From Pecten maximus (taxonomy: Eukaryota): DNA of 64,000 nucleotides. Below the pieces are notes generated by a model that was not told the DNA's origin, ran no database searches, and saw only the letters and a list, made by a program, of their open reading frames with translations. Below are positions 1-28,235 of the stretch, in pieces; position 1 is the stretch's first letter; every line of letters starts with the position of its first letter. A program made the translations under genes and the position numbers. The stretch spans positions 31,868,001 through 31,932,000 of the forward strand of contig NC_047019.1 in NCBI RefSeq assembly GCF_902652985.1, given 5' to 3'.

Positions 1-3000
1 TCACTGTCATAGTAACCCACGTTACAGGTACACACATTATTGGTACACACAGAGTTGTCCTTACATGCATTTGTTGGTGATGAAGGGCATGTCACTCCCG
101 GATTTAATCCTGATTAGAAATAATTTTGTTTAATGCAATCAGGCAAAAGTGACATAGAGTGATCACAGCATGTTGCATCAATCTTATTATGAAATTATAT
201 TAAATACCATTAAATCATTGATGTTATGAATTCATTGTGATGTGACCATTTAATAAGTGGTTTACATCATATATACTAGTAATTATGTGACTGTAGTAAA
301 ATGAGAAAGAGATACAATGACACAAAATTATTCTTAAAATTTCACTTTTAAAAGTGCAAATGTTAATATACATGTTCAATGATTTATAAAACCTTTAAAC
401 ACCTAGAGCTAACAAATAAGGTTCCTAGTGAAGTACCATTACAGTGTCATGATAACTTACTTGATTGACATGTAGAGCCACTGTCATAGTAACCAGTGTT
501 ACAGGTACATATACTACCACTACAGGTAGATAGGTCTGTACATTCATTGACCACATTGTTACAGGACTCTCCAGGAAGGATTTCTGATTGTATAATAAAC
601 AAAAGTATCAAACACAAAGTAAATTAAGTAAACAGTATCACATGCAGTCTGGTGCTTGCTAATCATTATAAAAAATACTTGATAAAATAAACAAGTTCAA
701 TACATGTACAGTACGTATAGAGTACCTGAAAACAAAATGACACATTTATCATAAATAGTTGCTTGTAAATATAAATCGGTAATGATGAAAGTCTCAGCTC
801 TCGGAACATATGACATCAGGTGAGTAGATTTCTGACTAATGGACGTTTTAAATTCAGTATGACATGTGCTTTTATCAACCATCATATAATACACTGTCTT
901 CATTGTTCAAATGATTATGCCTGATAATTCCATCCTAACATTTTCGTTCGATTCTTTGGGAACTGTTACCCTAACATTTAGTAGACTTTGCCTATACCTA
1001 CAGGTCTATATAGGAAGGATTAATCAAAGATTGTGGTGTATATTAATTTAGAAAAATATATTTCTATTGACAGACTTCTAATGAAGTCAAAAAATATCTG
1101 TCATTACTCAAAAGTGTAAATATCTAACTTACTTGCAGTACATATCCCATTATTGGCTGACGGACCATCACTGTCATAGTAACCCGAGTTACAGGTACAC
1201 ACATTATTGGTACACACCGAGTTGTCCTTACATGCATTTGTTGGTGATATAGGGCATGTCACTCCCGGATTTAATCCTGATTAGAAATAATTTTGTTTCA
1301 TGCAATCAGGCAAAAGTGACATAGAGTGATGTTGCATAATTTTGATTATGATATTATATAAAATACAATCAAATCTTAATGTCATGAAATGATTGTGATG
1401 TGACCATTTAAATGGTTTCCATCATACACTACTAATGTGACTGTAGTAAAATGAGAATGACAGATACAATGACACAAAATTATATTAAAAACTTCACTTT
1501 TAAAAGTTCAATATTTTAATGTTATTGTACATGCTCAATGATTTCAAAATCTTTAAACACCTAGAGCTAACAAATAAGGTTCCTAGTGAAGTACCATTAC
1601 AGTGTCATGATAACTTACTTAACTGACATGTAGAGCCACTGTCATAGTAACCAGTGATACAGGTACATTTACCACCAGTACAGGTAGACAAGTCGGTACA
1701 TTCATTGGCTACGTTGTTACAGGACTCTCCAGGAAGAATTTCTGATTGTATGAAAAACAAAAGTATCAAACATAACACTAAGTACCAAAAGGTTATCAAG
1801 AATATCACATGTAGTTTGGTGATTGTTAATCACTATAAATAATCTTGACAAAATAAACCAGATCAATACCTCAGCACGAAATGCCACATTTATAGCTGTT
1901 TATTGACAACTGTGTCAGTTTTAACAGCTGAATAGTCTAAGAGCTAATGTTATTTTGTTTTTACCATATACCATCATTAAATAAACTTGATTTGATTTGA
2001 TCTTAAATTGATACTTAACATTAAATATTGATCTACTTTTACTATCTATAAAATGATGAAGGTCACAATTCTTGGTATGACATCAGGTGAGTAGATTTCT
2101 GACTAATGGACATTTTAAATTCAGTATGACATGTGTTTCTGTCAACCATCATATAATACACTGTCTTCATTGTTCAAATGATTATGCCTCATAATTCCAT
2201 CCTAAAATTTCCGTTCGATTCTTTGGGAACTGTTACCCTAACATTTAGTAGACTTTGCCTATACCTACAGGTCTATATAGGAAGGATTTATCAGCATCAT
2301 ATAAAGATTGTGGTGTATATTTATTTAGAAAAATATATTTCTATTGACAGACTTCTAATGAAGTCAAAATATCTTTCATTACTCAAAAGTGTAAACATCT
2401 AACTTACTTGCAGTACATATCCCATTACTGAATGAAGGACCATCACTGTCATAGTAACCCACGTTACAGGTACACACATTATTGGTACACACAGAGTTGT
2501 CCTTACATGCATTTGTTGGTGATGAAGGGCATGTCACTCCCGGATTTAATCCTGATTAGAAATAATTTTGTTTAATGCAATCAGGCAAAAGTGACATAGA
2601 GTGATCACAGCATGTTGCATCAATCTTATTATGAAATTATATTAAATACCATTAAATCATTGATGTTATGAATTCATTGTGATGTGACCATTTAATAAGT
2701 GGTTTACATCATATATACTAGTAATTATGTGACTGTAGTAAAATGAGAAAGAGATACAATGACACAAAATTATTCTTAAAATTTCACTTTTAAAAGTGCA
2801 AATGTTAATATACATGTTCAATGATTTATAAAACCTTTAAACACCTAGAGCTAACAAATAAGGTTCCTAGTGAAGTACCATTACAGTGTCATGATAACTT
2901 ACTTGATTGACATGTAGAGCCACTGTCATAGTAACCAGTGTTACAGGTACATATACTACCACTACAGGTAGATAGGTCTGTACATTCATTGACCACATTG

Positions 3001-6000
3001 TTACAGGACTCTCCAGGAAGGATTTCTGATTGTATAATAAACAAAAGTATCAAACACAAAGTAAATTAAGTAAACAGTATCACATGCAGTCTGGTGCTTG
3101 CTAATCATTATAAAAAATACTTGATAAAATAAACAAGTTCAATACATGTACAGTACGTATAGAGTACCTGAAAACAAAATGACACATTATCATAAATAGT
3201 TGCTTGTAAATATAAATCGGTAATGATGAAAGTCTCAGCTCTCGGAACATATGACATCAGGTGAGTAGATTTCTGACTAATGGACGTTTTAAATTCAGTA
3301 TGACATGTGCTTTTATCAACCATCATATAATACACTGTCTTCATTGTTCAAATGATTATGCCTGATAATTCCATCCTAACATTTTCGTTCGATTCTTTGG
3401 GAACTGTTACCCTAACATTTAGTAGACTTTGCCTATACCTACAGGTCTATATAGGAAGGATTAATCAAAGATTGTGGTGTATATTAATTTAGAAAAATAT
3501 ATTTCTATTGACAGACTTCTAATGAAGTCAAAAATATCTGTCATTACTCAAAAGTGTAAATATCTAACTTACTTGCAGTACATATCCCATTATTGGCTGA
3601 CGGACCATCACTGTCATAGTAACCCGAGTTACAGGTACACACATTATTGGTACACACCGAGTTGTCCTTACATGCATTTGTTGGTGATATAGGGCATGTC
3701 ACTCCCGGATTTAGTCCTGATTAGAAATAATTTTGTTTCATGCAATCAGGCAAAAGTGACATAGAGTGATGTTGCATAATTTTGATTATGATATTATATA
3801 AAATACAATCAAATCTTAATGTCATGAAATGATTGTGATGTGACCATTTAAATGGTTTCCATCATACACTACTAATGTGACTGTAGTAAAATGAGAATGA
3901 CAGATACAATGACACAAAATTATATTAAAAACTTCACTTTTAAAAGTTCAATATTTTAATGTTATTGTACATGCTCAATGATTTCAAAATCTTTAAACAC
4001 CTAGAGCTAACAAATAAGGTTCCTAGTGAAGTACCATTACAGTGTCATGATAACTTACTTAACTGACATGTAGAGCCACTGTCATAGTAACCAGTGATAC
4101 AGGTACATTTACCACCAGTACAGGTAGACAAGTCGGTACATTCATTGGCTACGTTGTTACAGGACTCTCCAGGAAGAATTTCTGATTGTATGAAAAACAA
4201 AAGTATCAAACATAACACTAAGTACCAAAGGTTATCAAGAATATCACATGTAGTTTGGTGATTGTTAATCACTATAAATAATCTTGACAAAATAAACCAG
4301 ATCAATACCTCAGCACGAAATGCCACATTTATAGCTGTTTATTGACAACTGTGTCAGTTTTAAACAGCTGAATAGTCTAAGAGCTAATGTTATTTTGTTT
4401 TTACCATATACCATCATTAAATAAACTTGATTTGATTTGATCTTAAATTGATACTTAACATTAAATATTGATCTACTTTTACTATCTATAAAATGATGAA
4501 GGTCACAATTCTTGGTATGACATCAGGTGAGTAGATTTCTGACTAATGGACATTTTAAATTCAGTATGACATGTGTTTCTATCAACCATCATATAATACA
4601 CTGTCTTCATTGTTCAAATGATTATGCCTCATAATTCCATCCTAAAATTTCCGTTCGATTCTTTGGGAACTGTTACCCTAACATTTAGTAGACTTTGCCT
4701 ATACCTACAGGTCTATATAGGAAGGATTTATCAGCATCATATAAAGATTGTGGTGTATATTTATTTAGAAAAATATATTTCTATTGACAGACTTCTAATG
4801 AAGTCAAAATATCTTTCATTACTCAAAAGTGTAAACATCTAACTTACTTGCAGTACATATCCCATTACTGAATGAAGGACCATCACTGTCATAGTAACCC
4901 ACGTTACAGGTACACACATTATTGGTACACACAGAGTTGTCCTTACATGCATTTGTTGGTGATGAAGGGCATGTCACTCCCGGATTTAATCCTGATTAGA
5001 AATAATTTTGTTTAATGCAATCAGGCAAAAGTGACATAGAGTGATCACAGCATGTTGCATCAATCTTATTATGAAATTATATTAAATACCATTAAATCAT
5101 TGATGTTATGAATTCATTGTGATGTGACCATTTAATAAGTGGTTTACATCATATATACTAGTAATTATGTGACTGTAGTAAAATGAGAAAGAGATACAAT
5201 GACACAAAATTATTCTTAAAATTTCACTTTTAAAAGTGCAAATGTTAATATACATGTTCAATGATTTATAAAACCTTTAAACACCTAGAGCTAACAAATA
5301 AGGTTCCTAGTGAAGTACCATTACAGTGTCATGATAACTTACTTGATTGACATGTAGAGCCACTGTCATAGTAACCAGTGTTACAGGTACATATACTACC
5401 ACTACAGGTAGATAGGTCTGTACATTCATTGACCACATTGTTACAGGACTCTCCAGGAAGGATTTCTGATTGTATAATAAACAAAAGTATCAAACACAAA
5501 GTAAATTAAGTAAACAGTATCACATGCAGTCTGGTGCTTGCTAATCATTATGAAAAATACTTGATAAAATAAACAAGTTCAATACATGTACAGTACGTAT
5601 AGAGTACCTGAAAACAAAATGACACATTTATCATAAATAGTTGCTTGTAAATATAAATCGGTAATGATGAAAGTCTCAGCTCTGGGAACATATGACATCA
5701 GGTGAGTAGATTTCTGACTAATGGACGTTTTAAATTCAGTATGACATGTGCTTTTATCAACCATCATATAATACACTGTCTTCATTGTTCAAATGATTAT
5801 GCCTGATAATTCCATCCTAACATTTTCGTTCGATTCTTTGGGAACTGTTACCCTAACATTTAGTAGACTTTGCCTATACCTACAGGTCTATATAGGAAGG
5901 ATTAATCAAAGATTGTGGTGTATATTTATTTAGAAAAATACATTTCACTTGACAGACTTCTAATGAAGTGAAAAATATCTTTCATTACTCAAAAGTGTAA

Positions 6001-9000
6001 ATATCTAACTTACTTGCAGTACATATCCCATTATTGGCTGAAGGACTATCACTGTCATAGTAACCCGAGTTACAGGTACACACATTATTGGTACACACCG
6101 AGTTGTCCTTACATGCATTTGTTGGTGATATAGGGCATGTCACTCCCGGATTTAGTCCTGATTAGAAATAATTTTGTTTCATGCAATCAGGCAAAAGTGA
6201 CATAGAGTGATGTTGCATAAATTTTATTATGATATTATATAAAATACAATCAAATCTTAATGTCATGAAATGATTGTGATGTGACCATTTAAATGGTTTC
6301 CATCATACACTACTAATGTGACTGTAGTAAAATGAGAATGACAGATACAATGACACAAAATTATATTAAAAACTTCACTTTTAAAAGTTCAATATTTTAA
6401 TGTTATTGTACATGCTCAATGATTTCAAAATCTTTAAACACCTAGAGCTAACAAATAAGGTTCCTAGTGAAGTACCATTACAGTGTCATGATAACTTACT
6501 TAACTGACATGTAGAGCCACTGTCATAGTAACCAGTGATACAGGTACATTTACCACCAGTACAGGTAGACAAGTCGGTACATTCATTGGCTACGTTGTTA
6601 CAGGACTCTCCAGGAAGAATTTCTGATTGTATGAAAAACAAAAGTATCAAACAGAACACTAAATACCAAAGGTTATCAAGAATATCACATGTAGTTTGGT
6701 GATTGTTAATCACTATAAATAATCTTGACAAAATAAACCAGATCAATACCTCAGCACGAAATGCCACATTTATAGCTGTTTGTTGACAACTGTGTCAGTT
6801 TTAACAGCTGAATAGTCTAAGAGCTAATGTTATTTTGTTTTTACCATATACCATCATTAAATAAACTTGATTTGATTTGATCTTAAATTGATACTTAACA
6901 TTAAATATTGATCTACTTTTACTATCTATAAAATGATGAAGGTCACAATTCTTGGTATGACATCAGGTGAGTAGATTTCTGACTAATGGACATTTTAAAT
7001 TCAGTATGACATGTGTTTCTATCAACCATCATATAATACACTGTCTTCATTGTTCAAATGATTATGCCTCATAATTCCATCCTAAAATTTCCGTTCGATT
7101 CTTTGGGAACTGTTACCCTAACATTTAGTAGACTTTGCCTATACCTACAGGTCTATATAGGAAAGATTTATCAGCATCATATAAAGATTGTGGTGTATAT
7201 TTATTTAGAAAAATATATTTCTATTGACAGACTTCTAATGAAGTCAAAATATCTTTCATTACTCAAAAGTGTAAACATCTAACTTACTTGCAGTACATAT
7301 CCCATTACTGAATGAAGGACCATCACTGTCATAGTAACCCACGTTACAGGTACACACATTATTGGTACACACAGAGTTGTCCTTACATGCATTTGTTGGT
7401 GATGAAGGGCATGTCACTCCCGGATTTAATCCTGATTAGAAATAATTTTGTTTAATGCAATCAGGCAAAAGTGACATAGAGTGATCACAGCATGTTGCAT
7501 CAATCTTATTATGAAATTATATTAAATACCATTAAATCATTGATGTTATGAATTCATTGTGATGTGACCATTTAATAAGTGGTTTACATCATATATACTA
7601 GTAATTATGTGACTGTAGTAAAATGAGAAAGAGATACAATGACACAAAATTATTCTTAAAATTTCACTTTTAAAAGTGCAAATGTTAATATACATGTTCA
7701 ATGATTTATAAAACCTTTAAACACCTAGAGCTAACAAATAAGGTTCCTAGTGAAGTACCATTACAGTGTCATGATAACTTACTTGATTGACATGTAGAGC
7801 CACTGTCATAGTAACCAGTGTTACAGGTACATATACTACCACTACAGGTAGATAGGTCTGTACATTCATTGACCACATTGCTACAGGACTCTCCAGGAAG
7901 GATTTCTGATTGTATAATAAACAAAAGTATCAAACACAAAGTAAATTAAGTAAACAGTATCACATGCAGTCTGGTGCTTGCTAATCATTATAAAAAATAC
8001 TTGATAAAATAAACAAGTTCAATACATGTACAGTACGTATAGAGTACCTGAAAACAAAATGACACATTTATCATAAATAGTTGCTTGTAAATATAAATCG
8101 GTAATGATGAAAGTCTCAGCTCTCGGAACATATGACATCAGGTGAGTAGATTTCTGACTAATGGACGTTTTAAATTCAGTATGACATGTGCTTTTATCAA
8201 CCATCATATAATACACTGTCTTCATTGTTCAAATGATTATGCCTGATAATTCCATCCTAACATTTTCGTTCGATTCTTTGGGAACTGTTACCCTAACATT
8301 TAGTAGACTTTGCCTATACCTACAGGTCTATATAGGAAGGATTAATCAAAGATTGTGGTGTATATTTATTTAGAAAAATACATTTCACTTGACAGACTTC
8401 TAATGAAGTGAAAAATATCTTTCATTACTCAAAAGTGTAAATATCTAACTTACTTGCAGTACATATCCCATTATTGGCTGAAGGACCATCACTGTCATAG
8501 TAACCCGAGTTACAGGTACACACATTATTGGTACACACCGAGTTGTCCTTACATGCATTTGTTGGTGATATAGGGCATGTCACTCCCGGATTTAGTCCTG
8601 ATTTGGAATAATTTTGTTTCATGCAATCAGGCAAAAGTGACATAGAGTGATGTTGCATAAATTTTATTATGATATTATATAAAATACAATCAAATCTTAA
8701 TGTCATGAAATGATTGTGATGTGACCATTTAAATGGTTTCCATCATACACTACTAATGTGACTGTAGTAAAATGAGAATGACAGATACAATGACACAAAA
8801 TTATATTAAAAACTTCACTTTTAAAAGTTCAATATTTTAATGTTATTGTACATGCTCAATGATTTCAAAATCTTTAAACACCTAGAGCTAACAAATAAGG
8901 TTCCTAGTGAAGTACCATTACAGTGTCATGATAACTTACTTAACTGACATGTAGAGCCACTGTCATAGTAACCAGTGATACAGGTACATATACCACCACT

Positions 9001-12000
9001 ACAGGTAGACAAGTCGGTACATTCATTGGCTACGTTGTTACAGGACTCTCCAGGAAGGATTTCTGATTGTATGAAAAACAAAAGTATCAAACAGAACACT
9101 AAATACCAAAGGTTATCAAGAATATCACATGTAGTTTGGTGATTGTTAATCACTATAAATAATCTTGACAAAATAAACCAGATCAATACCTCAGCACGAA
9201 ATGCCACATTTATAGTTGTTTGTTGACAACTGTGTCAGTTTTAACAGCTGAATAGTCTAAGAGCTACTGTTATTTTGTTTTCACCGTATACCATCATTAA
9301 AAAAACTTCATTTGATTTGATCTTAAATTGATACTTAACATTAAATATTGATCTACTTTTACTATCTATAAAATGATGAAGGTCACAATTCTTGGTATGA
9401 CATCAGATGAGTAGATTTCTGACTAATGGACATTTTAAATTCAGTATGACATGTGTTTCTATCAACCATCATATAATACACTGTCTTCATTGTTCAAATG
9501 ATTATGCCTCATAATTCCATCCTAAAATTTCCGTTCGATTCTTTGGGAACTGTTACCCTAACATTTAGTAGACTTTGCCTATACCTACAGGTCTATATAG
9601 GAAGGATTTATCAGCATCATATAAAGATTGTGGTGTATATTTATTTAGAAAAATATATTTCTATTGACAGACTTCTAATGAAGTGAAAAAATATCTTTCA
9701 TTACTCAAAAGTGTAAATATCTAACTTACTTGCAGTACATATCCCATTATTGGTTGAAGGACCATCACTGTCATAGTAACCCGAGTTACAGGTACACACA
9801 TTATTGGTACACACAGAGTTGTCCTTACATGCATTTGTTGGTGATGAAGGGCATGTCACTCCCGGATTTAGTCCTGATTTGGAATAATTTTGTTTAATGC
9901 AATCAGGCAAAAGTGATATAGAGTGATCGCAACATGTTGCATCAATCTTATTATGATATTACATAAAATACAAATAAATCATTGATGTCATAAAATGATT
10001 GTGATGTGACCATTTAATAAGTGGTTTACATCAGATACTAGTAATTATGTGACTGTAGTAAAATGAGAAAGAGATACAATGACACAAAATTATTCTTAAA
10101 ATTTCACTTTTAAAAGTGCAAATGTTAATATACATGCTCAATGATTTCAAAATCTTTAAACACCTAGAGCTAACAAATAATGTTCCTAGTGAAGTACCAT
10201 TACAGTGTTATAATAACTTACTTAATTGACATGTAGATCCACTGTCGTAGTAACCAGTGTTACAGGTACATATACCACCACTACAGCTAGACAAGTCGGT
10301 ACATTCATTGGCCACATTGTTACAGGACTCTCCAGGAAGGATTTCTGATTGTATAATTACACCAAGATATACCAAAGTATCAAAGATAACACTAAGTACC
10401 AAAGGTTATCATAAATATCACATGGAGTTTGGTGTTTGTTAATCACTATAAATAATCTTGACAAAATAAACCAGATCAATACCTCAGCACGAAATGCCAC
10501 ATTTATAGTTGTTTGTTGACAACTGTGTCAGTTTTAACAGCTGAATAGTCTAAGAGCTAATGTTATTTTGTTTTTACCATATACCATCATTAAATAAACT
10601 TAATTTGATTTGATCTGAAATTGATACTTAACATTAAATATTGATCTACTTTTACTATCTATAAAATGATGAAGGTCACAATTCTTGGTATGATATCAGG
10701 TGAGTAGATTTCTGACTAATGGACGTTTTAAATTCAGTATGACATGTGTTTCTATCAACCATCATATAATACACTGTCTTCATTGTTCAAATGATTATGC
10801 CTGATAATTCCATCCTAACATTTTCGTTCGATTCTTTGGGAACTGTTACCCTAACATTTAGTAGACTTTGCCTATACCTACAGGTCTATATAGGAAGGAT
10901 TAATCAAAGATTGTGGTGTATATTTATTTAGAAAAATACATTTCACTTGACAGACTTCTAATGAAGTGAAAAATATCTTTTATTACTCAAAAGTGTAAAT
11001 ATCTAACTTACTTGCAGTACATATCCCATTATTGGCTGAAGGACCATCACTGTCATAGTAACCCGAGTTACAGGTACACACATTATTGGTACACACCGAG
11101 TTGTCCTTACATGCATTTGTTGGTGATATAGGGCATGTCACTCCCGGATTTAGTCCTGATTTGGAATAAGTTTGTTTCATGCAATCAGGCAAAAGTGACA
11201 TAGAGTGATGTTGCATAAATTTTATTATGATATTATATAAAATACAATCAAATCTTAATGTCATGAAATGATTGTGATGTGACCATTTAAATGGTTTCCA
11301 TCATACACTACTAATGTGACTGTAGTAAAATGAGAATGACAGATACAATGACACAAAATTATATTAAAAACTTCACTTTTAAAAGTTCAATATTTTAATG
11401 TTATTGTACATGCTCAATGATTTCAAAATCTTTAAACACCTAGAGCTAACAAATAAGGTTCCTAGTGAAGTACCATTACAGTGTCATGATAACTTACTTA
11501 ACTGACATGTAGAGCCACTGTCATAGTAACCAGTGATACAGGTACATATACCACCACTACAGGTAGACAAGTCGGTACATTCATTGGCTACGTTGTTACA
11601 GGACTCTCCAGGAAGGATTTCTGATTGTATGAAAAACAAAAGTATCAAACAGAACACTAAATACCAAAGGTTATCAAGAATATCACATGTAGTTTGGTGA
11701 TTGTTAATCACTATAAATAATCTTGACAAAATAAACCAGATCAATACCTCAGCACGAAATGCCACATTTATAGCTGTTTGTTGACAACTGTGTCAGTTTT
11801 AACAGCTGAATAGTCTAAGAGCTAATGTTATTTTGTTTTTACCGTATACCATCATTAAATAAACTTGATTTGATTTGATCTTAAATTGATACTTAACATT
11901 AAATATTGATCTACTTTTACTATCTATAAAATGATGAAGGTCACAATTCTTGGTATGACATCAGATGAGTAGATTTCTGACTAATGGACATTTTAAATTC

Positions 12001-13850
12001 AGTATGACATGTGTTTCTATCAACCATCATATAATACACTGTCTTCATTGTTCAAATGATTATGCCTCATAATTCCATCCTAAAATTTCCGTTCGATTCT
12101 TTGGGAACTGTTACCCTAACATTTAGTAGACTTTGCCTATACCTACAGGTCTATATAGGAAGGATTTATCAGCATCATATAAAGATTGTGGTGTATATTT
12201 ATTTAGAAAAATATATTTCTATTGACAGACTTCTAATGAAGTGAAAAAATATCTTTCATTACTCAAAAGTGTAAATATCTAACTTACTTGCAGTACATAT
12301 CCCATTATTGGTTGAAGGACCATCACTGTCATAGTAACCCGAGTTACAGGTACACACATTATTGGTACACACAGAGTTGTCCTTACATGCATTTGTTGGT
12401 GATGAAGGGCATGTCACTCCCGGATTTAGTCCTGATTAGAATTGATTTTGTTTAATGCAATCAGGCAAAAGTGATATAGAGTGATCGCAACATGTTGCAT
12501 CAATCTTATTATGATATTACATAAAATACAAATAAATCATTGATGTCATAAAATGATTGTGATGTGACCATTTAATAAGTGGTTTACATCAGATACTAGT
12601 AATTATGTGACTGTAGTAAAATGAGAAAGAGATACAATGACACAAAATTATTCTTAAAATTTCACTTTTAAAAGTGCAAATGTTAATATACATGCTCAAT
12701 GATTTCAAAATCTTTAAACACCTAGAGCTAACAAATAATGTTCCTAGTGAAGTACCATTACAGTGTTATAATAACTTACTTAATTGACATGTAGATCCAC
12801 TGTCGTAGTAACCAGTGTTACAGGTACATATACCACCACTACAGCTAGACAAGTCGGTACATTCATTGGCCACATTGTTACAGGACTCTCCAGGAAGGAT
12901 TTCTGATTGTATAATTACACCAAGATATACCAAAGTATCAAAGATAACACTAAGTACCAAAGGTTATCATAAATATCACATGGAGTTTGGTGATTGTTAA
13001 TCACTATAAATAATCTTGACAAAATAAACCAGATCAATACCTCAGCACGAAATGCCACATTTATAGCTGTTTGTTGACAACTGTGTCAGTTTTAACAGCT
13101 GAATAGTCTAAGAGCTAATGTTATTTTGTTTTTACCGTATACCATCATTAAATAAACTTGATTTGATTTGATCTGAAATTGATACTTAACATTAAATATT
13201 GATCTACTTTTACTATCTATAAAATGATGAAGGTCACAATTCTTGGTATGATATCAGGTGAGTAGATTTCTGACTAATGGACGTTTTAAATTCAGTATGA
13301 CATGTGTTTCTATCAACCATCATATAATACACTGTCTTCATTGTTCAAATGATTATGCCTGATAATTCCATCCTAACATTTTCGTTCGATTCTTTGGGAA
13401 CTGTTACCCTAACATTTAGTAGACTTTGCCTATACCTACAGGTCTATATAGGAAGGATTAATCAAAGATTGTGGTGTATATTTATTTAGAAAAATACATT
13501 TCATTTGACAGACTTCTAATGAAGTCAAAAAATATCTTTCATTACTCAAAAGTGTTAACATCTAACTTACTTGCAGTACATATCCCATTATTGGTTGAAG
13601 GACCATCACTGTCATAGTAACCCGAGTTACAGGTACACACAGTATTGGTACACACAGAGTTGTCCATACATGCATTTGTTGGTGATATAGGGCATGTCAC
13701 TCCCGGATTCAGTCCTGATTAGAAATAATTTTGTTTAATGCAATCAGGCAAAAGTGATATAGAGTGATCGCAGCATGTTGCATCAATCTTATTATGATAT
13801 TACATAAAATACAAATAAATCATTGATGTCATGAAATGATTGTGATGTGA
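1..13850. repeat. Exon+intron tandem array, monomers of 1165-1283 bp organised as 2440-bp and 2558-bp higher-order dimers
   Basis: A-exon starts at 1133, 2408, 3573, 4848, 6014, 7288, 8454, 9730, 11012, 12288, 13571 give spacings 1275/1165/1275/1166/1274/1166/1276/1282/1276/1283. Introns are almost identical between same-type copies. Homology stops abruptly at 13850. Confidence 0.97.
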
Positions 13851-16800
13851 ATTTAACTCAATTTCCGCTATTGGGCCCAACAACTCTGGCCACAGGAATA
13901 CCATACCCTCCGTTTATATAACATAAGTTCTCCTTTGTCAAATTATCATCTCCAGGTCAAATTTCATCAAAATCCATTCAGCTCCAAGGAAGCCACTTCT
14001 TCCCTTTATACAACATTAGTTCTCCTTTGCCTAATTATTCTTCAGGCCAAATTTCATCAAAATCCATTCAGGCATTCAGGACTAGTAGGGATATACAGGA
14101 TTTACCTCGATTTCCCCTATTGCACCCCATGCCTTCAGCCCCAAGGGGGCCACATCTTCCCTTTATACAACATTAGTTCTCCTTTGCCTAATTATGCTTC
14201 AGACCAAATTTCATCAAAATCCATTCAGGCATTCAGGACTAGTAGGGATTTACAGGATTTACCTCAATTTCTCCTTTGGGCACTACTCCTTCAGCCCCCA
14301 AGGGAGCCACACCTTCTGTTTATAAAACATTAGTTCTCCTTTGTCCAATAATGCTTCAAACTGAATTTCATCAAAATCCATCCAGGCATTTAGGACAAGT
14401 AGGAAATGTTGAAATTCTGATATCTCAATCACTTAACTATATATTAATGTTCATTCATTTAACATGTACTAGTATAGCCGATAATTAATTGCAGCCATGT
14501 TTGCAGTGACATGATACACTGAAACACCAAAATTGGACAATTTAGTTCTTTCAATGATGTTTTCCAACAGTAAAGTTCAACGTGAATAGAAATTGATATT
14601 TACATTTCAAACTTTCAGAAGCCTGTAATATCAAAAACCAGATTTCAACATTGTGTTTATCATGTTGTACCAAACAGGTATACCAATTTCCATGAAAATC
14701 AGACGTGTAAATTTTGACAAATCTGAAGTAGGACCACTGGACGGCCATTTAGTGGACAATGGCCTTTTTTGTGCTTCATCTTATAAATTAGAGTGTGTCT
14801 AATACTTATCTCTGCAAAGAAGAAAAAGAATAATCCGGTTAAAAACAATAACTCCCCAAACTTTGTCTTGTTGATCACCAGACAAAAATAAAATACTGAA
14901 TACTCAAAGGACAATAACTTTTGCAAAATGTTTTGAATTAAAATGTCGCTTGTTGAAACATAAAAACATATCATGATCATACATAAAACCCACGAAGTTT
15001 CAAAGTGACTCGTTAAAAACTGTAGGAGATCTCCAGACATAGATACAACTCCATACCAAATCATTTCTATCCAATTCTGATGAGTGAGAGTGCATGCAAT
15101 GTTCAACTTTAACAAAATTTTAAATATAAGATCACAATTTAACGTGGAAATCTTAACCTTCATTTACAGAATACTACCAATAATCCATGGTGCAGTAACT
15201 GGAAATTAGGAATGTTATTGATATAACTGGACATATTTGATAGAAAACAATTTCAAAATGCTATTCTTTTTTTTCTCAAAGTACCATGATTAGTTTAAGC
15301 ATTACTAGTCCCAAAGGAGAACTACTGTCATAGTAGCCTTTGTTACAGACACATTTGTTTTGTGTGTTGATAAGGCAGTATATATATATGTATTGGCTGT
15401 ACTATTACAAGGTACAAATATATATAACATATGCTATGTCGATAGTGACCAAATTCTGGTAGGCCTGACAATCTGTACTCTCCATAAATCAATATGTCCA
15501 TTCATCTCACTGGTATACCATCCCGATACATTAGTCACAGCCTTGTTTGTAGTGTCCTAATACACTAACAAGATTTCACCATAATATTAATTGTGTTTAT
15601 CATGTTATATCAAATTAATTATACTAATGTCAATGAAAATCAGGTATAAATATAGGTATAGTCTGCTGTCTTACCCATTTGTATAAAATGTGTTAAAATA
15701 TAAGAAGAAGAATCGGGATAAAAAATAACTCCTCAAAACTTTTTTTCACACATCTCCAAGACAAAAATCAAATACTAGTTGTTATGAAATTATCATTAAT
15801 CAAAGGGTAATAACTTTTGCAAAATGTTTTAAATCAAAATGTCGTTTATTGAAACATCAATACATATCATGATCTTAAAGCCCACATTTCAAAGTGATTA
15901 TTTAAAAAAAAATGTAGGAGATTTCCAGACAAAGAGACAATGCAGTGTTTTTGTTCGGACTTCCAATTATTGTTCAGCCTCCCATGGTTTCTGGATTGGG
16001 AAAGTAAAAGATCAACAAGTTCCTTTAAATTAGTCAACGAAAGCTCCTTGTTCAAGTGGCAAATCCTGGTTAGAACGAATATTCATACCCTGCCTACACT
16101 GCTCTCCAACAGGGTATAAAATCCCTCCCACTGCTGATAGCAAAGTGTAGCAAGCCCCACACCGGATGAGTTTATGTCCAAAAAAATAATATTCCTAGAT
16201 ACATACACGGTAATTAAAGGTCCATACCAGCCTAGGTTGAAAATCTTTACTCGCATGAGTAGAAGGATAACAAGTTTTCCATTAAAATTTCCAAAAACCT
16301 TACCAAAAATAGGCAAATTCTTTAATTCAAATCCTTTGTGTCCCCATGTTATGATTAATTGTAATAAGTTACAGCCTCATATGTATAAAATGTACTTGGC
16401 AAATTACATATATACACTTCAAAATGTAGATGATTTAATATATAGAAACTTTGTATATTTGCATTACTGTCACTATGCTTTGTATCAAAAGGAAAATTTT
16501 GAGTAGAATATACATAGGAATTTATGACTTTCATAATTACTGTTGATATATTTGATCAAATGTTGTTAATTTGATAATGGTGTTTTGTAACCTTGATGAA
16601 CTTACATGTACACACATCGTTATCATTCCTACAGTGTAACTCTTTTGTACCCTGGGTAACAAAATTATTCTTCTCAACTGTACGCCATTACAGACATGTG
16701 TTTGCACACTCTGTGAATTAGAACCCGCCTGCTAAACAATTACTATCAACATACTATTGCATCACTAATTCGTACAAGACCTTGAACATGTATTTTTAGT

Positions 16801-19800: not shown

Positions 19801-20324
19801 TCCAAGAGGAATCTCAATGCCCACCATATATTGTAGAACAGTCCATATTTGGTCTATCTATATAAGATATGTAAGGCTATCCTCTTCACTGTTTGATCTT
19901 TTTAATCATTTAAAAACAAAGGAAACCTAGGACTACACAGTCAAAATTCAAAAAGTGGCCATTTTGTCTTCTGATCAATCTCAAAATTCAATATGTACAT
20001 ACAATGAGTTCAAGTCTTGTTTAATAGAATGCCAAGTGTAGGATATTGCCCAAAAAAATGCAAATGCCGAACAGTTCAAACAAACATCAAGAGAAATCAT
20101 GTGTTCTACATATACCCTGATAAAAGTAAATTCAAATGCAAAAAAAATCAGTAATCTCTGCACTTACTTTCCAGACAGGTTGATCCACTTTGGTAATGAG
20201 TTGCTGTATTACAGGCACACAATCCACCACTACAGATCTCCCCTGTAGTACAGTAACTAGTACCATCATTGGTACAGGCTGTACCAACATCTGCTTTACA
20301 TCCTCCATTGTATAACAAGACCAT
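1..20324 (-). CDS. Secreted Cys-rich tandem EB-module/EGF-like repeat protein (multi-exon; 3' end runs off the window, extreme 5' exon not located)
   Basis: Exons in transcription order, all bounded by AG acceptors and GTAAG donors: 20324-20168 (MVLLYNGGCKA/DVGTACTNDGTSYCTTGEICSGGLCACNTATHYQSGSTCLE). Then alternating type A (144 nt): 13714-13571, 12431-12288, 11155-11012, 9873-9730, 8597-8454, 7431-7288, 6157-6014, 4991-4848, 3716-3573, 2551-2408, 1276-1133, 109-1 (partial). Type B (123 nt): 12902-12780, 11620-11498, 10344-10222, 9062-8940, 7905-7783, 6622-6500, 5465-5343, 4181-4059, 3025-2903, 1741-1619, 583-461. A = (R)LNPGVTCP[S/I]SPTNACKDNSVCTNNVCTCN[V/S]GYYDSDGPSxxNGICTA. B = (K)ILPGESCNNV[V/A]NECTDLS[T/S]C[S/T]GxxCTC[N/I]TGYYDSGSTCQ[S/L]. 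All are phase 1-1 and stop-free, giving >1050 aa within the window. The Cys spacing C-x6/7-C-x5-C-x4-C-x-C-x10/16-C resembles the EB module. Confidence 0.9.
13851..14410. repeat. Degenerate repeat with an AAATTTCATCAAAATCCATTC core (possible non-autonomous Helentron/HINE-like element)
   Basis: Four copies of caaatttcatcaaaatccattca(ggcattcaggactagtaggg) and of tatacaacattagttctcctttg at about 13915-14400. The family assignment is inference. Confidence 0.5.
14845..15040. repeat. Interspersed repeat copy 1 (paralog at about 15720-15930)
   Basis: Shared aataactcc...caaagg..aataacttttgcaaaatgtttt.aat.aaaatgtcg.tt.ttgaaacat.aa.acatatcatgatc...tttcaaagtga...tgtaggagat.tccagaca. Confidence 0.7.
15321..15360 (-). 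pseudogene. Decayed remnant of an EB-module exon (pseudo-exon)
   Basis: Minus-strand translation NKCVCNKGYYDSS matches the module core. The splice donor is deleted. The flank 15090-15320 is homologous to the flank 17178-17385 of the interrupted exon. Confidence 0.65.
15720..15930. repeat. Interspersed repeat copy 2 (paralog of 14845-15040)
   Basis: Direct similarity to 14845-15040. Confidence 0.7.
17423..18275 (-). pseudogene. Dead type-B EB-module exon interrupted by a MITE and lacking its splice acceptor
   Basis: Removing 17474-18198 and one TA restores a 126-nt phase 1-1 exon, (K)IRAGDTGCSGIADACTAMSTCTGNICVCNEGYYDSGDVCSA. The donor GTAAGT is intact at 17422-17417. The acceptor reads caactAA instead of AG at 18277-18276. 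Confidence 0.9.
17474..18198. mobile_element. Non-autonomous Tc1/mariner-superfamily (Tc2-like) MITE, ~725 bp
   Basis: Perfect 24-bp TIR CCGTATTTGACCTAATAAGGGCGC (17475-17498 / 18175-18198), TA on both sides (17472-17473, 18199-18200), and subterminal TAATAAGGGCGCC repeats. CCGTA termini are typical of Tc2-type elements. Confidence 0.9.
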
Positions 20325-20915: not shown

Positions 20916-21732
20916 CGAGGATTGATACATTGTAGATAAATTGTGAGCCTCATATTGAAATATTTGAATTTTGCCGGACATATTCTATTATTTTTCAACA
21001 TACACCATTCAGTATCTTTACACGCCAGCAGTGTTTTAGGGCCTCAATACCACTTTTATAGAGCTCCTTTTCTGGGCTTTTTAAAAATGCATCCACTGTA
21101 TGTATGACGTCATCATCGGACTGAAAGTGGGTAAGAAATAGCTGTTTAAGGCGAATGTTTAATCGATTTAAAACCACAATCGTAACTGACAACCATAACA
21201 ATGACAGGCTTGTGGACAGGAGCATTGACCTGATGAAATAACACACCTTCAGTGAGCTTTCCGCGGCGCTTAAGTTTAATATTTCTCCGTAACTGCCTCA
21301 GAAATGAAGCATAGTATATGACATTGATTGTTCGTCCATTTTCGAGATATTCTATCAGCAGAATACCATCTGTCTCAGAAAACCGAGGCCATAACCTTCC
21401 CAGCTGATGGAACAATACGTGTCTTCTTTAGCAGGGGAGAGCCAAGGTGCTTCAAGTCTTTCAAATTTTGCTTGGCCCCTGAGGTAATATGATGAACCCA
21501 TGTTTCATCCATATGTCCAAATATTGGATCACTGTTTTTCATCAATTTTGTCTATTTTGCAAAAGCCGGTTGTTTTGTTTATGTTTCGGTGCAACCTCGT
21601 CGATATGAACTAACCAAATGAGACCAGCCCTTGGGTACACGGCCCTATATAGTCAGAGAATAGTAGGACTTAAAAGAACATCCCTGTGTACTTCCTTCAA
21701 TACGAGGCTCATAACATATCAGTCATCTCTCG
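20916..21732 (-). mobile_element. Degenerate, internally deleted mariner (DD34D) transposon
   Basis: Frameshifted transposase fragments DETWVHH (~21490-21510), GILLIEYLENGRTIN..YYASFLRQLR..KRRGKL..GVLFHQVNAPVH (catalytic D changed to V) and HFQSDDDVI...YKSGIEALKHCW. Degenerate TIRs TA|CGAG...TGAGCCTC.TATTGAA at both ends. Confidence 0.85.
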
Positions 21733-22809: not shown

Positions 22810-22909
22810 NNNNNNNNNNNNNNNNNNNNNNNNNNNNNNNNNNNNNNNNNNNNNNNNNNNNNNNNNNNNNNNNNNNNNNNNNNNNNNNNNNNNNNNNNNN
22901 NNNNNNNNN
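22810..22909. other. Scaffold gap (100 N)
   Basis: Run of exactly 100 N, typical of a placeholder for a gap of unknown size. Confidence 1.
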
Positions 22910-23859: not shown

Positions 23860-24560
23860 AACTCATGTGCTGGAATTTCAAGACGCAAAGAAATATTTCA
23901 AGAATAGAAGAAAATAAATAAATAAATACTGTAAATAAAAATGAAAAATGAAATCACATGAATGAATAGAAAAATAAAGTTTAATGGAAAAATGATTACT
24001 GCTTCCAGAAAATATATGTTAACAGCTAACGTGAGACAATTAATATTGTCATATCAAAACCGGACACATCTGTGTTATGAATCTGTTAAGAAAATAAAAT
24101 ACGTTTTTGATTGCAAATTTGAATTATATTTTCTTTATCATTAACAGATTTATATATTGTATATATAAATTATATCTGTATGTACATGTAACTCCATAAC
24201 CATGTATAATTGCATTTACAATTTATTTATACCAATTATTGACAGTATTTTCTAAAGAGTACCAAACTCAATCCTTTATCTAACTTAGGATTATAAACCT
24301 AAGATTAGAAAAGGCTTCATATCCGTAGTAAAGTCCATTATTCGAAGTGCATCAGGAAAATATCTGTTTAGTTAAATAAAATATGTATACACGCTCTATA
24401 TAAATATGTATACATACTTTTTATTGATACTTATACTTACTATATACTTGATACGACATGTGATAATTGTTTTCCACAATGATACGTAGAACATGTTGTC
24501 ATATACAATGTAAGTCTACGTAGTTCACCGTAACAGATTGAGGACAACCCATATTTAATA

Positions 24561-27730: not shown

Positions 27731-28235
27731 TGACTAAATTGGCAAAGCTGTTTTGCTTGTTTGTCGTATATCACTAATTACAGAAAGGGTTCAATGAATG
27801 TTGGGTAGCGCTTTTGGTCTGATTGAAAGATATAATATTATGTTTGCTACTCTTTCACTGTATCAAATATATTTTGTAATACCGTACTTTGCTACTAATA
27901 AAATGGTCCGAGACGATGTCTGACAGTATTTCACCTATGTATAGAAGTGATAAAGCTATTGTTTGGAGGTATATGCTTATTGAAAGGAATCTGATTATGA
28001 GCGAGATCAGTCTAATACAGAAATAAGTTGGTTTTAGACGGCAGTATTTCATTACAGAAGGGACCCAGCCAGTGATTTGATTAATGCACACATATTTCTT
28101 GATATTGGTCATCATGTTATAGCGGGATAATATCTATACATCTACAATTAAAATATTTCATTTTAATAATATTTGTGTTTGTTTTCATAAAAAAACTAAC
28201 TATTTTTACTTCTCCCACAGGATGTAAACGTAACT

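What the first reader, a model, noticed from the sequence alone, without database searches (positions are those of the whole stretch)
1..13850. A protein encoded by a satellite-like higher-order repeat: 23 alternating one-module exons in a homogenised exon+intron array
Seen: every ~1.2-kb monomer holds one 144-nt A exon and one 123-nt B exon, each a single 6-Cys module, all phase 1-1 with intact AG/GTAAG. Introns are as conserved between copies as exons, and indels between copies fall in introns but never in the 23 exons. Inference: this is a coding macrosatellite that expands and contracts by unequal crossing-over, so protein length should be polymorphic between alleles. Because all exons are symmetric, any subset can be skipped in frame, allowing length or combinatorial isoforms of a large extracellular disulfide-rich rod.
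Basis: partly seen in the sequence, partly recalled or inferred. Interest (0 to 1): 0.8.

Follow-up and report, generated by a model that had tools for sequence, protein, structure and literature searches.

The report
Coding exon-intron macrosatellite in scallop gene
A king-scallop gene for a tenascin-like matrix protein carries a recently amplified 19-kb tandem array whose 1.2-kb units each add two small cysteine-rich modules; this is a mollusc counterpart of the human LPA kringle repeat, and related scallop genes have grown similar arrays independently.

Summary
On the minus strand, window 1-13905 holds 11 complete 144-nt A exons, one A exon cut by the window edge, and 11 123-nt B exons. All are phase 1-1 with intact AG/GTAAG and encode 6-Cys EB/EGF-like modules.

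Monomers are 1165-1285 bp, of three types. They form a 2.44-kb dimer repeat whose copies are 99-100% identical, introns included. All 23 distinct indels lie in introns.

The array runs about 5 kb past the window's left edge, giving 17 A and 16 B exons in all (about 1,470 aa). The gene continues with EB and FN3 exons.

Transcriptome contigs lie on the exons and cross two predicted introns at GT..AG. A collinear paralog 200 kb away has only 5 such exons, so the expansion is recent and gene-specific. Against an older paralog array only the exons still align, so the exons are under constraint.

Homologs in Argopecten (three 5.9-kb units) and Ylistrum (about 22 units of 1,059 bp, FN3+EB) carry independent homogenised arrays.

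Copy-number polymorphism and exon skipping remain untested here. Function is inferred: a secreted matrix or adhesive rod. It is a new member of a known kind, the multi-exon coding VNTR like LPA KIV-2.

The parts
1..13905 (-). Part of the exon+intron tandem array that lies in the window. The whole array spans window 13905 to about -5036 and continues in locus L004.
1..8597 (-). Young core of the array: 2,440-bp dimers (monomer types X and Y) 99-100% identical to each other, continuing left of the window to -3607
8598..13714 (-). Older 5' end of the array: four monomers (m1-m4; two of type Z, two early Y-type), 94-99.5% alike among themselves
13571..13714 (-). A exon 1 (144 nt, phase 1-1), positional ortholog of the first A exon of paralog g3
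12780..12902 (-). B exon 1 (123 nt, phase 1-1)
   Evidence: RNA contigs lie on it
12288..12431 (-). A exon 2
   Evidence: spliced to B exon 2 in a transcriptome contig (joint 11620/12288)
11498..11620 (-). B exon 2
11012..11155 (-). A exon 3
10222..10344 (-). B exon 3
9730..9873 (-). A exon 4
8940..9062 (-). B exon 4
   Evidence: spliced to A exon 5 (joint 8597/8940)
8454..8597 (-). A exon 5
7783..7905 (-). B exon 5
7288..7431 (-). A exon 6
6500..6622 (-). B exon 6
6014..6157 (-). A exon 7
5343..5465 (-). B exon 7
4848..4991 (-). A exon 8
4059..4181 (-). B exon 8
3573..3716 (-). A exon 9
2903..3025 (-). B exon 9
2408..2551 (-). A exon 10
1619..1741 (-). B exon 10
1133..1276 (-). A exon 11; the query used for Pfam, the protein search and the fold
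461..583 (-). B exon 11; passes the Pfam EB gathering score
1..109 (-). A exon 12, cut by the window start (the whole exon is -34..109)
20168..20324 (-). Exon upstream of the array (157 nt, phase 0 to 1), encoding the N-terminal 7-Cys EB-like module. Its last base plus GA of A exon 1 gives Arg, as in the Mizuhopecten homolog P0006.
24441..24494 (-). Tentative first coding exon: ATG plus 18 codons, then GTAAGT, phase 0. It has a weak likeness to the N-termini of homologs P0006 and P0022. Not verified.

Best explanation
The region is the 5' two-thirds of an intragenic coding macrosatellite in a Pecten maximus gene on the minus strand.

The protein. The gene encodes a scallop-lineage 'tenascin-like' protein. 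It has an N-terminal EB-like module, then 33 alternating 6-Cys EB/EGF-like modules (17 A of 48 aa and 16 B of 41 aa, about 1,470 aa, one module per exon). After these come alternating EB-like and fibronectin type III exons.

How the array arose. The repeat unit is a 1.2-kb A-exon/intron/B-exon/intron monomer. A collinear paralog still has 3 A + 2 B exons, which suggests the starting size. The interior of this gene's array was amplified recently, most likely by unequal homologous recombination between monomers. The last rounds copied a 2.44-kb dimer, so those copies are 99-100% identical in exons and introns alike.

Why it stays coding. Every exon is symmetric (phase 1-1, length a multiple of 3), so each gain or loss of units keeps the reading frame. 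Selection is seen as absence of indels and stops in exons, invariant Cys/Gly/Tyr-Asp positions, dN/dS below 1, and exon-only conservation against an older paralog array.

Expression and function. The array is transcribed and adjacent exons are spliced as predicted. The likely product is a secreted, disulfide-rich rod whose length is set by the copy number. Its role as an extracellular matrix or adhesive (byssus-type) component is inferred, not shown.
For: Shown:
- Exon structure, phases and splice sites.
- Monomer types and the dimer higher-order repeat.
- Indels only in introns, 23 events, P about 0.005.
- dN/dS 0.15-0.5, with dS close to the intron divergence.
- Run X8 contigs lie on exon bins and hardly on intron bins. 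They cross introns 8598-8939 and 11621-12287 with GT..AG on the minus strand. Runs X13 and X14 also have exon contigs, and one X14 contig joins an A exon to a B exon.
- Collinear paralog g3: flanks 95-98% identical, but a 3.3-kb array against about 30 kb here.
- Edge modules pair between g1 and g3, while the interior modules are gene-specific. The modules of a further array, g4, form their own clade with support 92/82.
- Comparing g1 with g4, only the exons (about 170 nt, 88-90% identical) still align.
- FN3 exons score above the Pfam cut-off downstream of the array. EB scores above the cut-off for the B exon.
- Homologs are all bivalve. Only 19 cluster representatives out of 1.84 billion reach E<=0.001. 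The best is Argopecten irradians 'tenascin-like', with the same B-R-A-K-B junction residues.
- Independent homogenised arrays exist in two other scallop assemblies. A. irradians has three 5.9-kb units at 99.0-99.4%. Ylistrum balloti has about 22 units of 1,059 bp (FN3+EB) at 99.1-99.4%.
- Species identity: contig C416 has the same length (30,727 bp) as the contig of a protein named Pecten maximus.
Against: - No read spans the array, so the exact copy number (31 contiguous exons) rests on the assembly alone. Three consecutive dimers are virtually identical.
- My attempt to read copy number from contig depth in DNA run X4 gave no consistent relation.
- The run types are guesses ('RNA?'). Contigs cannot show full-length transcripts, so inclusion of all 33 exons in one mRNA is not shown.
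- In X8 the first A exon (13571-13714) is hardly covered, although X13 does cover it.
- The start and end of the gene are not established. The candidate first exon is weak, and an assembly gap at -43164..-42665 lies in the 3' part.
- The module fold could not be confirmed by structure search (Foldseek E>=1.7; Z<=2.8).
- Tissue of expression and function are unknown.
Confidence: 0.8

Rival explanations
1. Assembly artefact. The locus really holds a short array (a few monomers), and the long-read assembler inflated near-identical dimers.
For: Monomers m8-m13 are 99.8-100% identical, the situation in which assemblers misjudge copy number. No spanning read was examined. The depth test was inconclusive.
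Against: - The copies carry copy-specific substitutions and indels and fall into three types in an ordered pattern.
- In DNA run X4, contigs on the array reach up to about 6-7 times the depth of contigs on the flank, which is present twice in the reference. So the sequence is multi-copy in real DNA.
- Arrays of the same kind are present in a second paralog of this genome (11 A + 11 B, 83-96% alike, hence not collapsible) and in two other species' assemblies.
Confidence: 0.1
2. The array is a pool of cassette exons rather than a constitutive rod. Only a subset of modules is included in any one mRNA, giving length or combinatorial isoforms.
For: - All exons are symmetric, so any skip stays in frame.
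- The Argopecten RefSeq isoforms X1 (625 aa) and X2 (535 aa) differ by exactly one B+A pair. Both omit a B exon whose partner A exon carries a 1-bp insertion.
- A joint 'skips 1624' appears in X8 and X13.
Against: - The 1624 joint is equally well explained by the normal adjacent junction, because the first 25 nt of the A exons are identical.
- The clear joints are those between neighbouring exons.
- RefSeq isoforms are automated models.
Confidence: 0.2
3. Neutral runaway duplication. The extra modules are tolerated but not useful, and the array is on its way to decay. Transcription and splicing simply follow from copied splice sites.
For: - The interior copies are too young for selection to be read from them. 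Within a monomer type, exons are no more conserved than introns.
- Some within-type dN/dS values are about 1, based on very few changes.
- One Argopecten copy has a frameshift.
Against: - Between monomer types dN/dS is 0.15-0.5, and no indel or stop is seen in 33 exons against 23 intronic indels.
- The older g4 array (monomers 83-96% alike) still has 22 intact exons, and only exons remain alignable to g1.
- Long arrays recur in three genera.
Confidence: 0.15

Closest known systems
[quoted passage not shown]
   Same: The tandem unit contains two whole exons plus their introns. Each unit adds an in-frame disulfide-rich module to a secreted protein. Copies are near-identical, introns included. 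[quoted passage not shown]
   Different: - Here one unit encodes two separate small modules, not one kringle split over two exons.
- The unit is 1.2 kb, organised as a 2.44-kb dimer higher-order repeat.
- Polymorphism between alleles is not yet shown.
- The host is a mollusc and the protein is unrelated.
Higher-order coding repeats such as the NBPF Olduvai (DUF1220) triplets, and multi-exon repeats in DMBT1, CR1 and nebulin (from my own knowledge, not tested here)
   Same: Domains encoded by one or two exons are amplified together with their introns as higher-order units. Interior copies are homogenised and edge copies are older.
   Different: Those are vertebrate genes with other folds. There is no sequence relation.
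Scallop byssal EGF-like proteins (Sbp9 / 'EC' family) and the foot-specific 'tenascin-like' gene of Chlamys farreri (PMC6244088, PMC9168380, PMC5700196)
   Same: These are scallop-lineage secreted proteins with long tandem runs of 6-Cys EGF-like modules (up to 49). Module number varies strongly between paralogs. The genome assembly failed across the repeats.
   Different: - The Sbp9 modules carry a PCGGPC motif with C-x3-C first spacing and are interrupted by Calx-beta domains.
- The modules here have C-x6/7-C first spacing, no such motif, and FN3 partners.
- All Calx-beta hits of this genome lie on other chromosomes, with the cluster on C15.
- Whether the C. farreri 'tenascin-like' gene belongs to this family could not be tested, because I held no sequence for it.
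Tenascins (vertebrate extracellular matrix proteins)
   Same: The order of parts is alike: a run of small EGF-type modules followed by FN3 domains. RefSeq names the Argopecten homolog 'tenascin-like'.
   Different: - No fibrinogen-like C-terminal domain was found near the locus (only 150 of 380 candidates were scored).
- EB modules alternate with the FN3 domains.
- No assembly domain was identified.
- This is a resemblance in architecture only.
Pfam EB module (PF01683), described from nematode proteins
   Same: The B exon passes the gathering score, and the spacing of the last six cysteines matches profile positions 17-52.
   Different: The modules cover only the last two-thirds of the 52-position profile. 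The A exon is just below the cut-off.

Membership tests
Multi-exon coding VNTR / macrosatellite (LPA KIV-2 type) | The tandem unit contains complete exons and introns | tested here: met
   Each 1165-1285-bp monomer holds one A and one B exon with both introns
Multi-exon coding VNTR / macrosatellite (LPA KIV-2 type) | The unit is frame-neutral, so any copy number keeps the reading frame | tested here: met
   Exons are 144 and 123 nt, all phase 1-1
Multi-exon coding VNTR / macrosatellite (LPA KIV-2 type) | Copies are near-identical in introns as well as exons | tested here: met
   Dimer copies are 99-100% identical. Intron identity within a type is 99.1-100% for the X and Y copies that form the dimers, and 96-98% for the three older Z copies
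Multi-exon coding VNTR / macrosatellite (LPA KIV-2 type) | Repeat exons are present in mature transcripts | tested here: met
   Contigs of runs X8, X13 and X14 lie on exons and cross two introns at GT..AG. Full-length inclusion is not shown.
Multi-exon coding VNTR / macrosatellite (LPA KIV-2 type) | Copy number varies between alleles or individuals | not testable with these tools
   Only short contigs of other runs were available, and depth gave no usable estimate
Higher-order repeat (satellite-type organisation) | Diverged monomers are grouped in a larger unit whose copies are far more alike than the monomers within it | tested here: met
   Monomer types X and Y are 88-89% alike, while successive X+Y dimers are 99-100% alike at a 2,440-bp period
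Pfam EB module PF01683 | Score at or above the gathering cut-off (24.3 bits) | tested here: met
   B exon scores 27.6 bits, E 3.1e-6, covering profile positions 17-52 only
Pfam EB module PF01683 | The same criterion for the A exon | tested here: not met
   23.8 bits against a cut-off of 24.3. EGF_2 and the Teneurin-like EGF model score far below their cut-offs.
EGF-like fold | Small two-stranded sheet held by three disulfides, recognisable by structure comparison | tested here: inconclusive
   The AlphaFold model of the A module has pLDDT 77 and a hairpin at residues 19-28. The best Foldseek hits are EGF domains but at E>=1.7. VIA-align gives Z<=2.8, tied between EGF domains and knottins. The profile finds no PDB relative by sequence.
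Tenascin family | EGF-type repeats followed by FN3 domains | tested here: met
   Three FN3 exons score above cut-off (34.8-43.6 bits) downstream of the array
Tenascin family | C-terminal fibrinogen-like globe | tested here: not met
   No listed PF00147 hit lies within C5:31.4-31.9 Mb (only part of the candidates was scored, and an assembly gap lies in the 3' part of the gene)
Scallop EC / Sbp9 byssal family | Calx-beta domains inserted among the EGF-like repeats, and a PCGGPC motif in the modules (PMC6244088) | tested here: not met
   There is no Calx-beta hit on C5, with all 94 candidates scored. The modules lack the motif.
Molluscan EGF-ZP shell matrix proteins (EGFZP/EGFL, PMC9290575) | Zona pellucida domain, or membership of the EGFL/EGFZP gene cluster | tested here: not met
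   No PF00100 hit on C5

The most novel reading that the evidence does not exclude
Pectinid 'tenascin-like' genes form an accordion gene family. Each lineage and each paralog repeatedly grows and shrinks exon+intron macrosatellites of whichever module pair lies at hand (A+B here and in Argopecten, FN3+EB in Ylistrum). As a result, individuals carry alleles that encode matrix or adhesive rods of different lengths. Skipping of symmetric exon pairs would add a second layer of length variation. Length would then be a fast-evolving, selectable mechanical property of a scallop extracellular fibre.
Probability: 0.3. Interest if true: 0.7.

Novelty: new member of a known kind. Interest (0 to 1): 0.5.

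Why it matters
Coding arrays in which whole exon-intron units are amplified are well studied in only a handful of human genes, LPA above all. There, copy number sets protein size and a disease-relevant phenotype.

This locus gives a clean invertebrate example with three advantages:
- An unexpanded collinear paralog sits 200 kb away and serves as an internal 'before' state.
- An older array in the same cluster gives the long-term outcome.
- Independent arrays in two other scallop genera show that the process recurs in this gene family.

That makes this locus a usable system for measuring rates of unequal exchange, homogenisation against selection, and the effect of module number on a structural protein. 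Practically, such loci are where short-read assemblies and automated gene models fail. The Argopecten RefSeq models start and end inside introns. Scallop matrix and byssus gene catalogues are therefore likely to be incomplete for this family.

Tried and rejected
- Tandem Repeats Finder missed the array because its longest period is 500. The repeat finder and my own alignments were used instead.
- Copy number from contig depth in DNA run X4 looked roughly proportional for 4 of 6 contigs on a first pass. A point-by-point test showed no correlation, so I draw only the weak conclusion that the array sequence is multi-copy.
- The 'skips 1624' joint is not accepted as evidence of exon-pair skipping.
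- Structure route: the model is moderate and both structure searches were non-significant. The profile search of PDB sequences found nothing.
- The EGF-ZP shell matrix protein idea is rejected: no ZP domain on this chromosome.
- Sbp9/EC byssal family membership is rejected: no Calx-beta on C5 and a different module motif.
- True tenascin membership is rejected or left open: no fibrinogen domain nearby.
- The signal-peptide exon was searched with crude rules. Only a weak candidate at 24441-24494 came out. A hydrophobic ORF at 21225 looks like the tail of a mariner-type transposase and was dropped.
- The word search with the Argopecten protein found no Pecten maximus model of this gene in the 344-1094 aa range. 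That says nothing about longer models.
- Literature searches for 'EB module' with bivalve, and for scallop tenascin-like tandem exon, returned nothing.
All searches used single exons by reference or database proteins. The only pooling of exons was inside a script, to count synonymous and non-synonymous differences per monomer.
- The N run at 22810-22909 and the two gaps left of the window were left untouched.
Full report
WHERE AND WHAT. The window is G000:C5:31868001-31932000. The genome is Pecten maximus. Contig C416 of G000 is 30,727 bp, the same length as the contig that carries a protein the source names 'uncharacterized protein LOC117318887 [Pecten maximus]'. The gene under study runs on the minus strand, so its 5' end is at high window coordinates.

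CHECK OF THE OBSERVATION. The repeat finder shows 11-12 copies of every 300-nt probe, with spacings alternating around 1166 and 1275 nt, and a 2,440-nt period at 98-100% identity. Pattern and translation scans found 11 complete 144-nt A exons, 11 123-nt B exons and one A exon cut by the window start. All 22 complete exons have ..ATCAG before them and GTAAGTTA after them. Both lengths are multiples of three. The frame places two bases of a split codon at the exon start and one at its end (phase 1-1). The split codons read AGA (Arg) at B-to-A junctions and AAA (Lys) at A-to-B junctions. Each exon encodes one module with six cysteines, spaced A: C-x7-C-x5-C-x4-C-x-C-x15-C and B: C-x6-C-x5-C-x4-C-x-C-x10-C. 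No exon has a stop or a frameshift.

I aligned the 15 complete monomers, including those left of the window. They fall into three types:
- X: 1165-1167 bp, 5 copies.
- Y: 1274-1276 bp, 7 copies.
- Z: 1282-1285 bp, 3 copies.
Types are 88-95% alike, whereas successive X+Y dimers are 99-100% alike. That is a genuine higher-order repeat.

Exon columns contain no gaps (0 of 267) while intron columns contain 172 of 1045. These resolve into 23 distinct indel intervals, all intronic. If placed at random, that outcome has a probability of about 0.005. The share of columns with substitutions is the same in exons (12-15%) and introns (14-16%).

EXTENT OF THE ARRAY AND THE REST OF THE GENE. I fetched 200 kb to the left of the window. 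The contiguous array continues to window coordinate about -5036, making 16 A + 15 B exons over 18.75 kb. The next intron is about 10 kb and holds two long open frames of a P-element/THAP9-type transposase (TNP-like RNase H domain). It is followed by one more B exon (-15416..-15294) and one more A exon (-15905..-15762) with intact splice sites. The total is 17 A + 16 B, or about 1,470 residues.

Further downstream lie:
- EB-like exons at about -23166, -29491, -37063 and -42168.
- Three fibronectin type III exons (34.8, 43.6 and 42.0 bits against a cut-off of 25).
- An assembly gap at -43164..-42665, beyond which I could not define the 3' end.

Upstream of the array, exon 20168-20324 encodes a 7-Cys EB-like module. 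Its final base joins the GA of A exon 1 to give Arg, exactly as in the Mizuhopecten homolog P0006. This exon begins in phase 0 and has an in-frame stop 11 codons upstream. A short first coding exon must therefore exist. The only candidate I found is 24441-24494 (ATG, 18 codons, GTAAGT), and it is weak.

EXPRESSION. One call each of the look-up of sequencing runs and read laying was available. All runs are Logan contigs, so depth is not a measure of expression. In run X8 (type guessed as RNA) the contigs lie on the bins that contain exons and almost nowhere on introns. Contigs join 8597 to 8940 (skipping exactly the 342-nt intron) and 11620 to 12288 (the 667-nt intron). The skipped stretches end CT..AC on the plus strand, which is GT..AG on the minus strand. 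Runs X13 and X14, from two other studies, also carry exon contigs, and X14 has a 247-nt contig that joins an A exon to a B exon. DNA run X4 covers introns as well and shows none of these joints. The array exons are thus transcribed and spliced as predicted.

Two cautions apply:
- A joint 'skips 1624' (B exon 3 to A exon 5) cannot be told from the normal B3-to-A4 junction. The first 25 nt of the A exons are identical, and the short side of the joint is 25-32 nt.
- A exon 1 is almost uncovered in X8, though covered in X13. The tool warns that holes prove nothing.

WHAT THE MODULES ARE. Pfam EB (PF01683) matches the B exon above its gathering score (27.6 against 24.3) and the A exon just below it (23.8). 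In both it covers only profile positions 17-50/52. EGF models score far lower. An AlphaFold model of the A module, built from a 25-row alignment of natural modules, reached pLDDT 77 with one beta hairpin. Structure searches were not significant: the best Foldseek hits were EGF domains at E>=1.7, and VIA-align gave Z<=2.8, tied with knottins. I therefore call them EB/EGF-like 6-Cys modules on sequence grounds only.

RELATIVES. A full HMMER scan of 1.84 billion cluster representatives with one A exon gave only 19 hits at E<=0.001. All of the named ones are bivalve proteins.
- The best is Argopecten irradians 'tenascin-like isoform X2' (535 aa). It is an alternation of B and A modules with the same R and K junction residues.
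- Its isoform X1 (625 aa) differs by exactly one B+A pair.
- Ylistrum balloti proteins show a different unit, FN3+EB, repeated many times almost without change.

No fibrinogen-like domain is listed near the locus, no Calx-beta domain lies on this chromosome, and no ZP domain either. The protein is therefore tenascin-like in layout only. It is not a member of the Sbp9/EC byssal family (PMC6244088) or of the EGF-ZP shell proteins (PMC9290575).

HISTORY OF THE ARRAY. A exons occur in five places, all but one on a 400-kb stretch of C5:
- This gene (g1): 17 A exons.
- g3, 190 kb to the left: 3 A + 2 B exons.
- g4, at C5:31,532,583-31,553,941: 11 A + 11 B exons.
- g5: 2 A exons.
- One hit on C416.

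g1 and g3 are collinear. Their 5' flanks are 96-98% identical and their 3' flanks 92-98%, yet g3 has a 3.3-kb array where g1 has about 30 kb. In a module tree, g1's first A pairs with g3's first, and g1's last two pair with g3's last, while the interior g1 modules are gene-specific. The g4 modules form their own clade with support 92/82 (47 columns only, so resolution is poor). The interior of g1 therefore expanded after the g1/g3 duplication (2-5% flank divergence). The last rounds copied the X+Y dimer (0-1% divergence).

The monomer types are mosaics. Z is close to Y in intron 1 (96%). It is closer to X than to Y in exon A (96% against 94%) and intron 2 (94% against 91%). This is what exchange between misaligned monomers produces. 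These are the signatures expected from unequal homologous recombination, but the mechanism itself is inferred.

IS IT UNDER SELECTION? Within a type the copies are too young to tell. Between types, dN/dS is 0.15-0.5 and dS (0.09-0.17) is about equal to the intron divergence (0.05-0.14) (only 261 coding sites, so values are rough). In the older g4 array the monomers are 83-96% alike and all 22 exons are still intact. Between g1 and g4 only stretches of about 170 nt centred on the exons still align, at 88-90%. So 'introns as conserved as exons' reflects recency or homogenisation, not lack of constraint on the exons.

THE SAME PHENOMENON ELSEWHERE.
- The genomic locus of the Argopecten protein holds three 5.9-kb units, each with two B and two A exons, 99.0-99.4% identical over exons and introns. 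One A copy there carries a 1-bp insertion, and the RefSeq models leave out that B+A pair.
- The Ylistrum locus holds about 22 copies of a 1,059-bp unit at 99.1-99.4% identity over 22 kb.

Three assemblies of three genera thus show homogenised coding arrays in this family, with different units and periods. This argues for independent, recurrent expansion and against a one-off assembly error.

WHAT IS NOT SHOWN.
- Copy number in this animal rests on the assembly. My depth test on X4 was inconclusive beyond showing that array sequence is several-fold deeper than the two-copy flank.
- Polymorphism between alleles, exon skipping, the gene's ends, tissue and function are open.
- The functional reading is a secreted rod whose length is set by copy number, possibly a matrix or byssus-type component. 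It leans on three things: the domain content, the N-terminal hydrophobic segments of homologs P0006 and P0022, and the literature on scallop byssal EGF-like and tenascin-like proteins (PMC6244088, PMC9168380, PMC5700196). It is inference only.

COMPARISON AND VERDICT. The closest known system is the human LPA KIV-2 repeat: a two-exon, 5.6-kb coding unit with 1-40 copies per allele (PMC11462820 abstract). From my own knowledge, the NBPF Olduvai triplets are a coding higher-order repeat of similar logic. The scallop array meets four of the five defining features of that kind. The fifth, allelic variation, could not be tested. I found no paper describing it. I rate it a new member of a known kind, made more interesting by the internal 'before' paralog and the recurrence across genera.

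Noticed in passing
window 13977-14403: A 157-bp tandem repeat (2.7 copies, 88% matches) sits in the intron just upstream of the array. It belongs to a high-copy dispersed family: more than 70 places genome-wide at 70-82% identity, and contig depth in the thousands in DNA and RNA runs. Repeats with a 155-157-bp offset also sit inside the introns of the Argopecten array.
   Followed up: partly
L005:7722-9191 (-) and the adjoining frame, window about -12278..-9899: Two long open frames (490 and 314 aa) of a P-element/THAP9-type transposase (Pfam TNP-like RNase H N-terminal domain, 45.6 bits) lie in the 10-kb intron that separates the last B+A pair from the rest of the array. This may be a young insertion.
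   Followed up: partly
window 28200-30395 (+): A single 732-aa open frame with two CARD domains (Pfam CARD, E 1.4e-24) and no recognised catalytic domain.
   Followed up: no
window 57058-58662 (-): A 535-aa open frame with the tyrosinase central domain (E 4.9e-25). Tyrosinases are partners of byssal and shell matrix proteins in scallops, but no link to the array gene was tested.
   Followed up: no
L030:3701-26746 (Ylistrum balloti, GCA_031769215.1): About 22 tandem copies of a 1,059-bp unit, 99.1-99.4% identical. Each unit encodes one FN3 and one EB-like module of a 4,303-aa protein. This is a second kind of coding macrosatellite in the same gene family.
   Followed up: partly
L029:13489-31361 (Argopecten irradians, GCA_041381155.1): Three 5.9-kb higher-order units (B-A-B-A each), 99.0-99.4% identical. 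The A exon copy near L029:17223-17370 has a 1-bp insertion (or an assembly error), and the RefSeq models omit that exon pair. The models also begin and end inside introns.
   Followed up: partly
G000:C5:31532583-31553941 (L024-L026): An older paralogous array of 11 B + 11 A exons, all intact, with monomer spacing of 1.1-2.2 kb and one 6-kb interruption. Monomers are 83-96% alike.
   Followed up: partly
window about -45913..-44895 (L008): A minisatellite about 1 kb long that stays open in several frames (repeated PHDHL.CIY / LPARP.ILY motifs). It lies between the last recognised exon of this gene and the next paralog. It may be non-coding.
   Followed up: no
window 13571-13714 in run X8: The first A exon of the array has almost no contig cover in X8, although the interior exons are well covered. 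X13 does cover it. This could be a filter effect, an allele difference or an alternative 5' structure.
   Followed up: no
G000:C15:8.44-8.77 Mb: A dense cluster of Calx-beta exon hits (over 30), probably the P. maximus counterpart of the scallop EGFL/Calx-beta 'EC' (Sbp9-type) byssal gene family.
   Followed up: no
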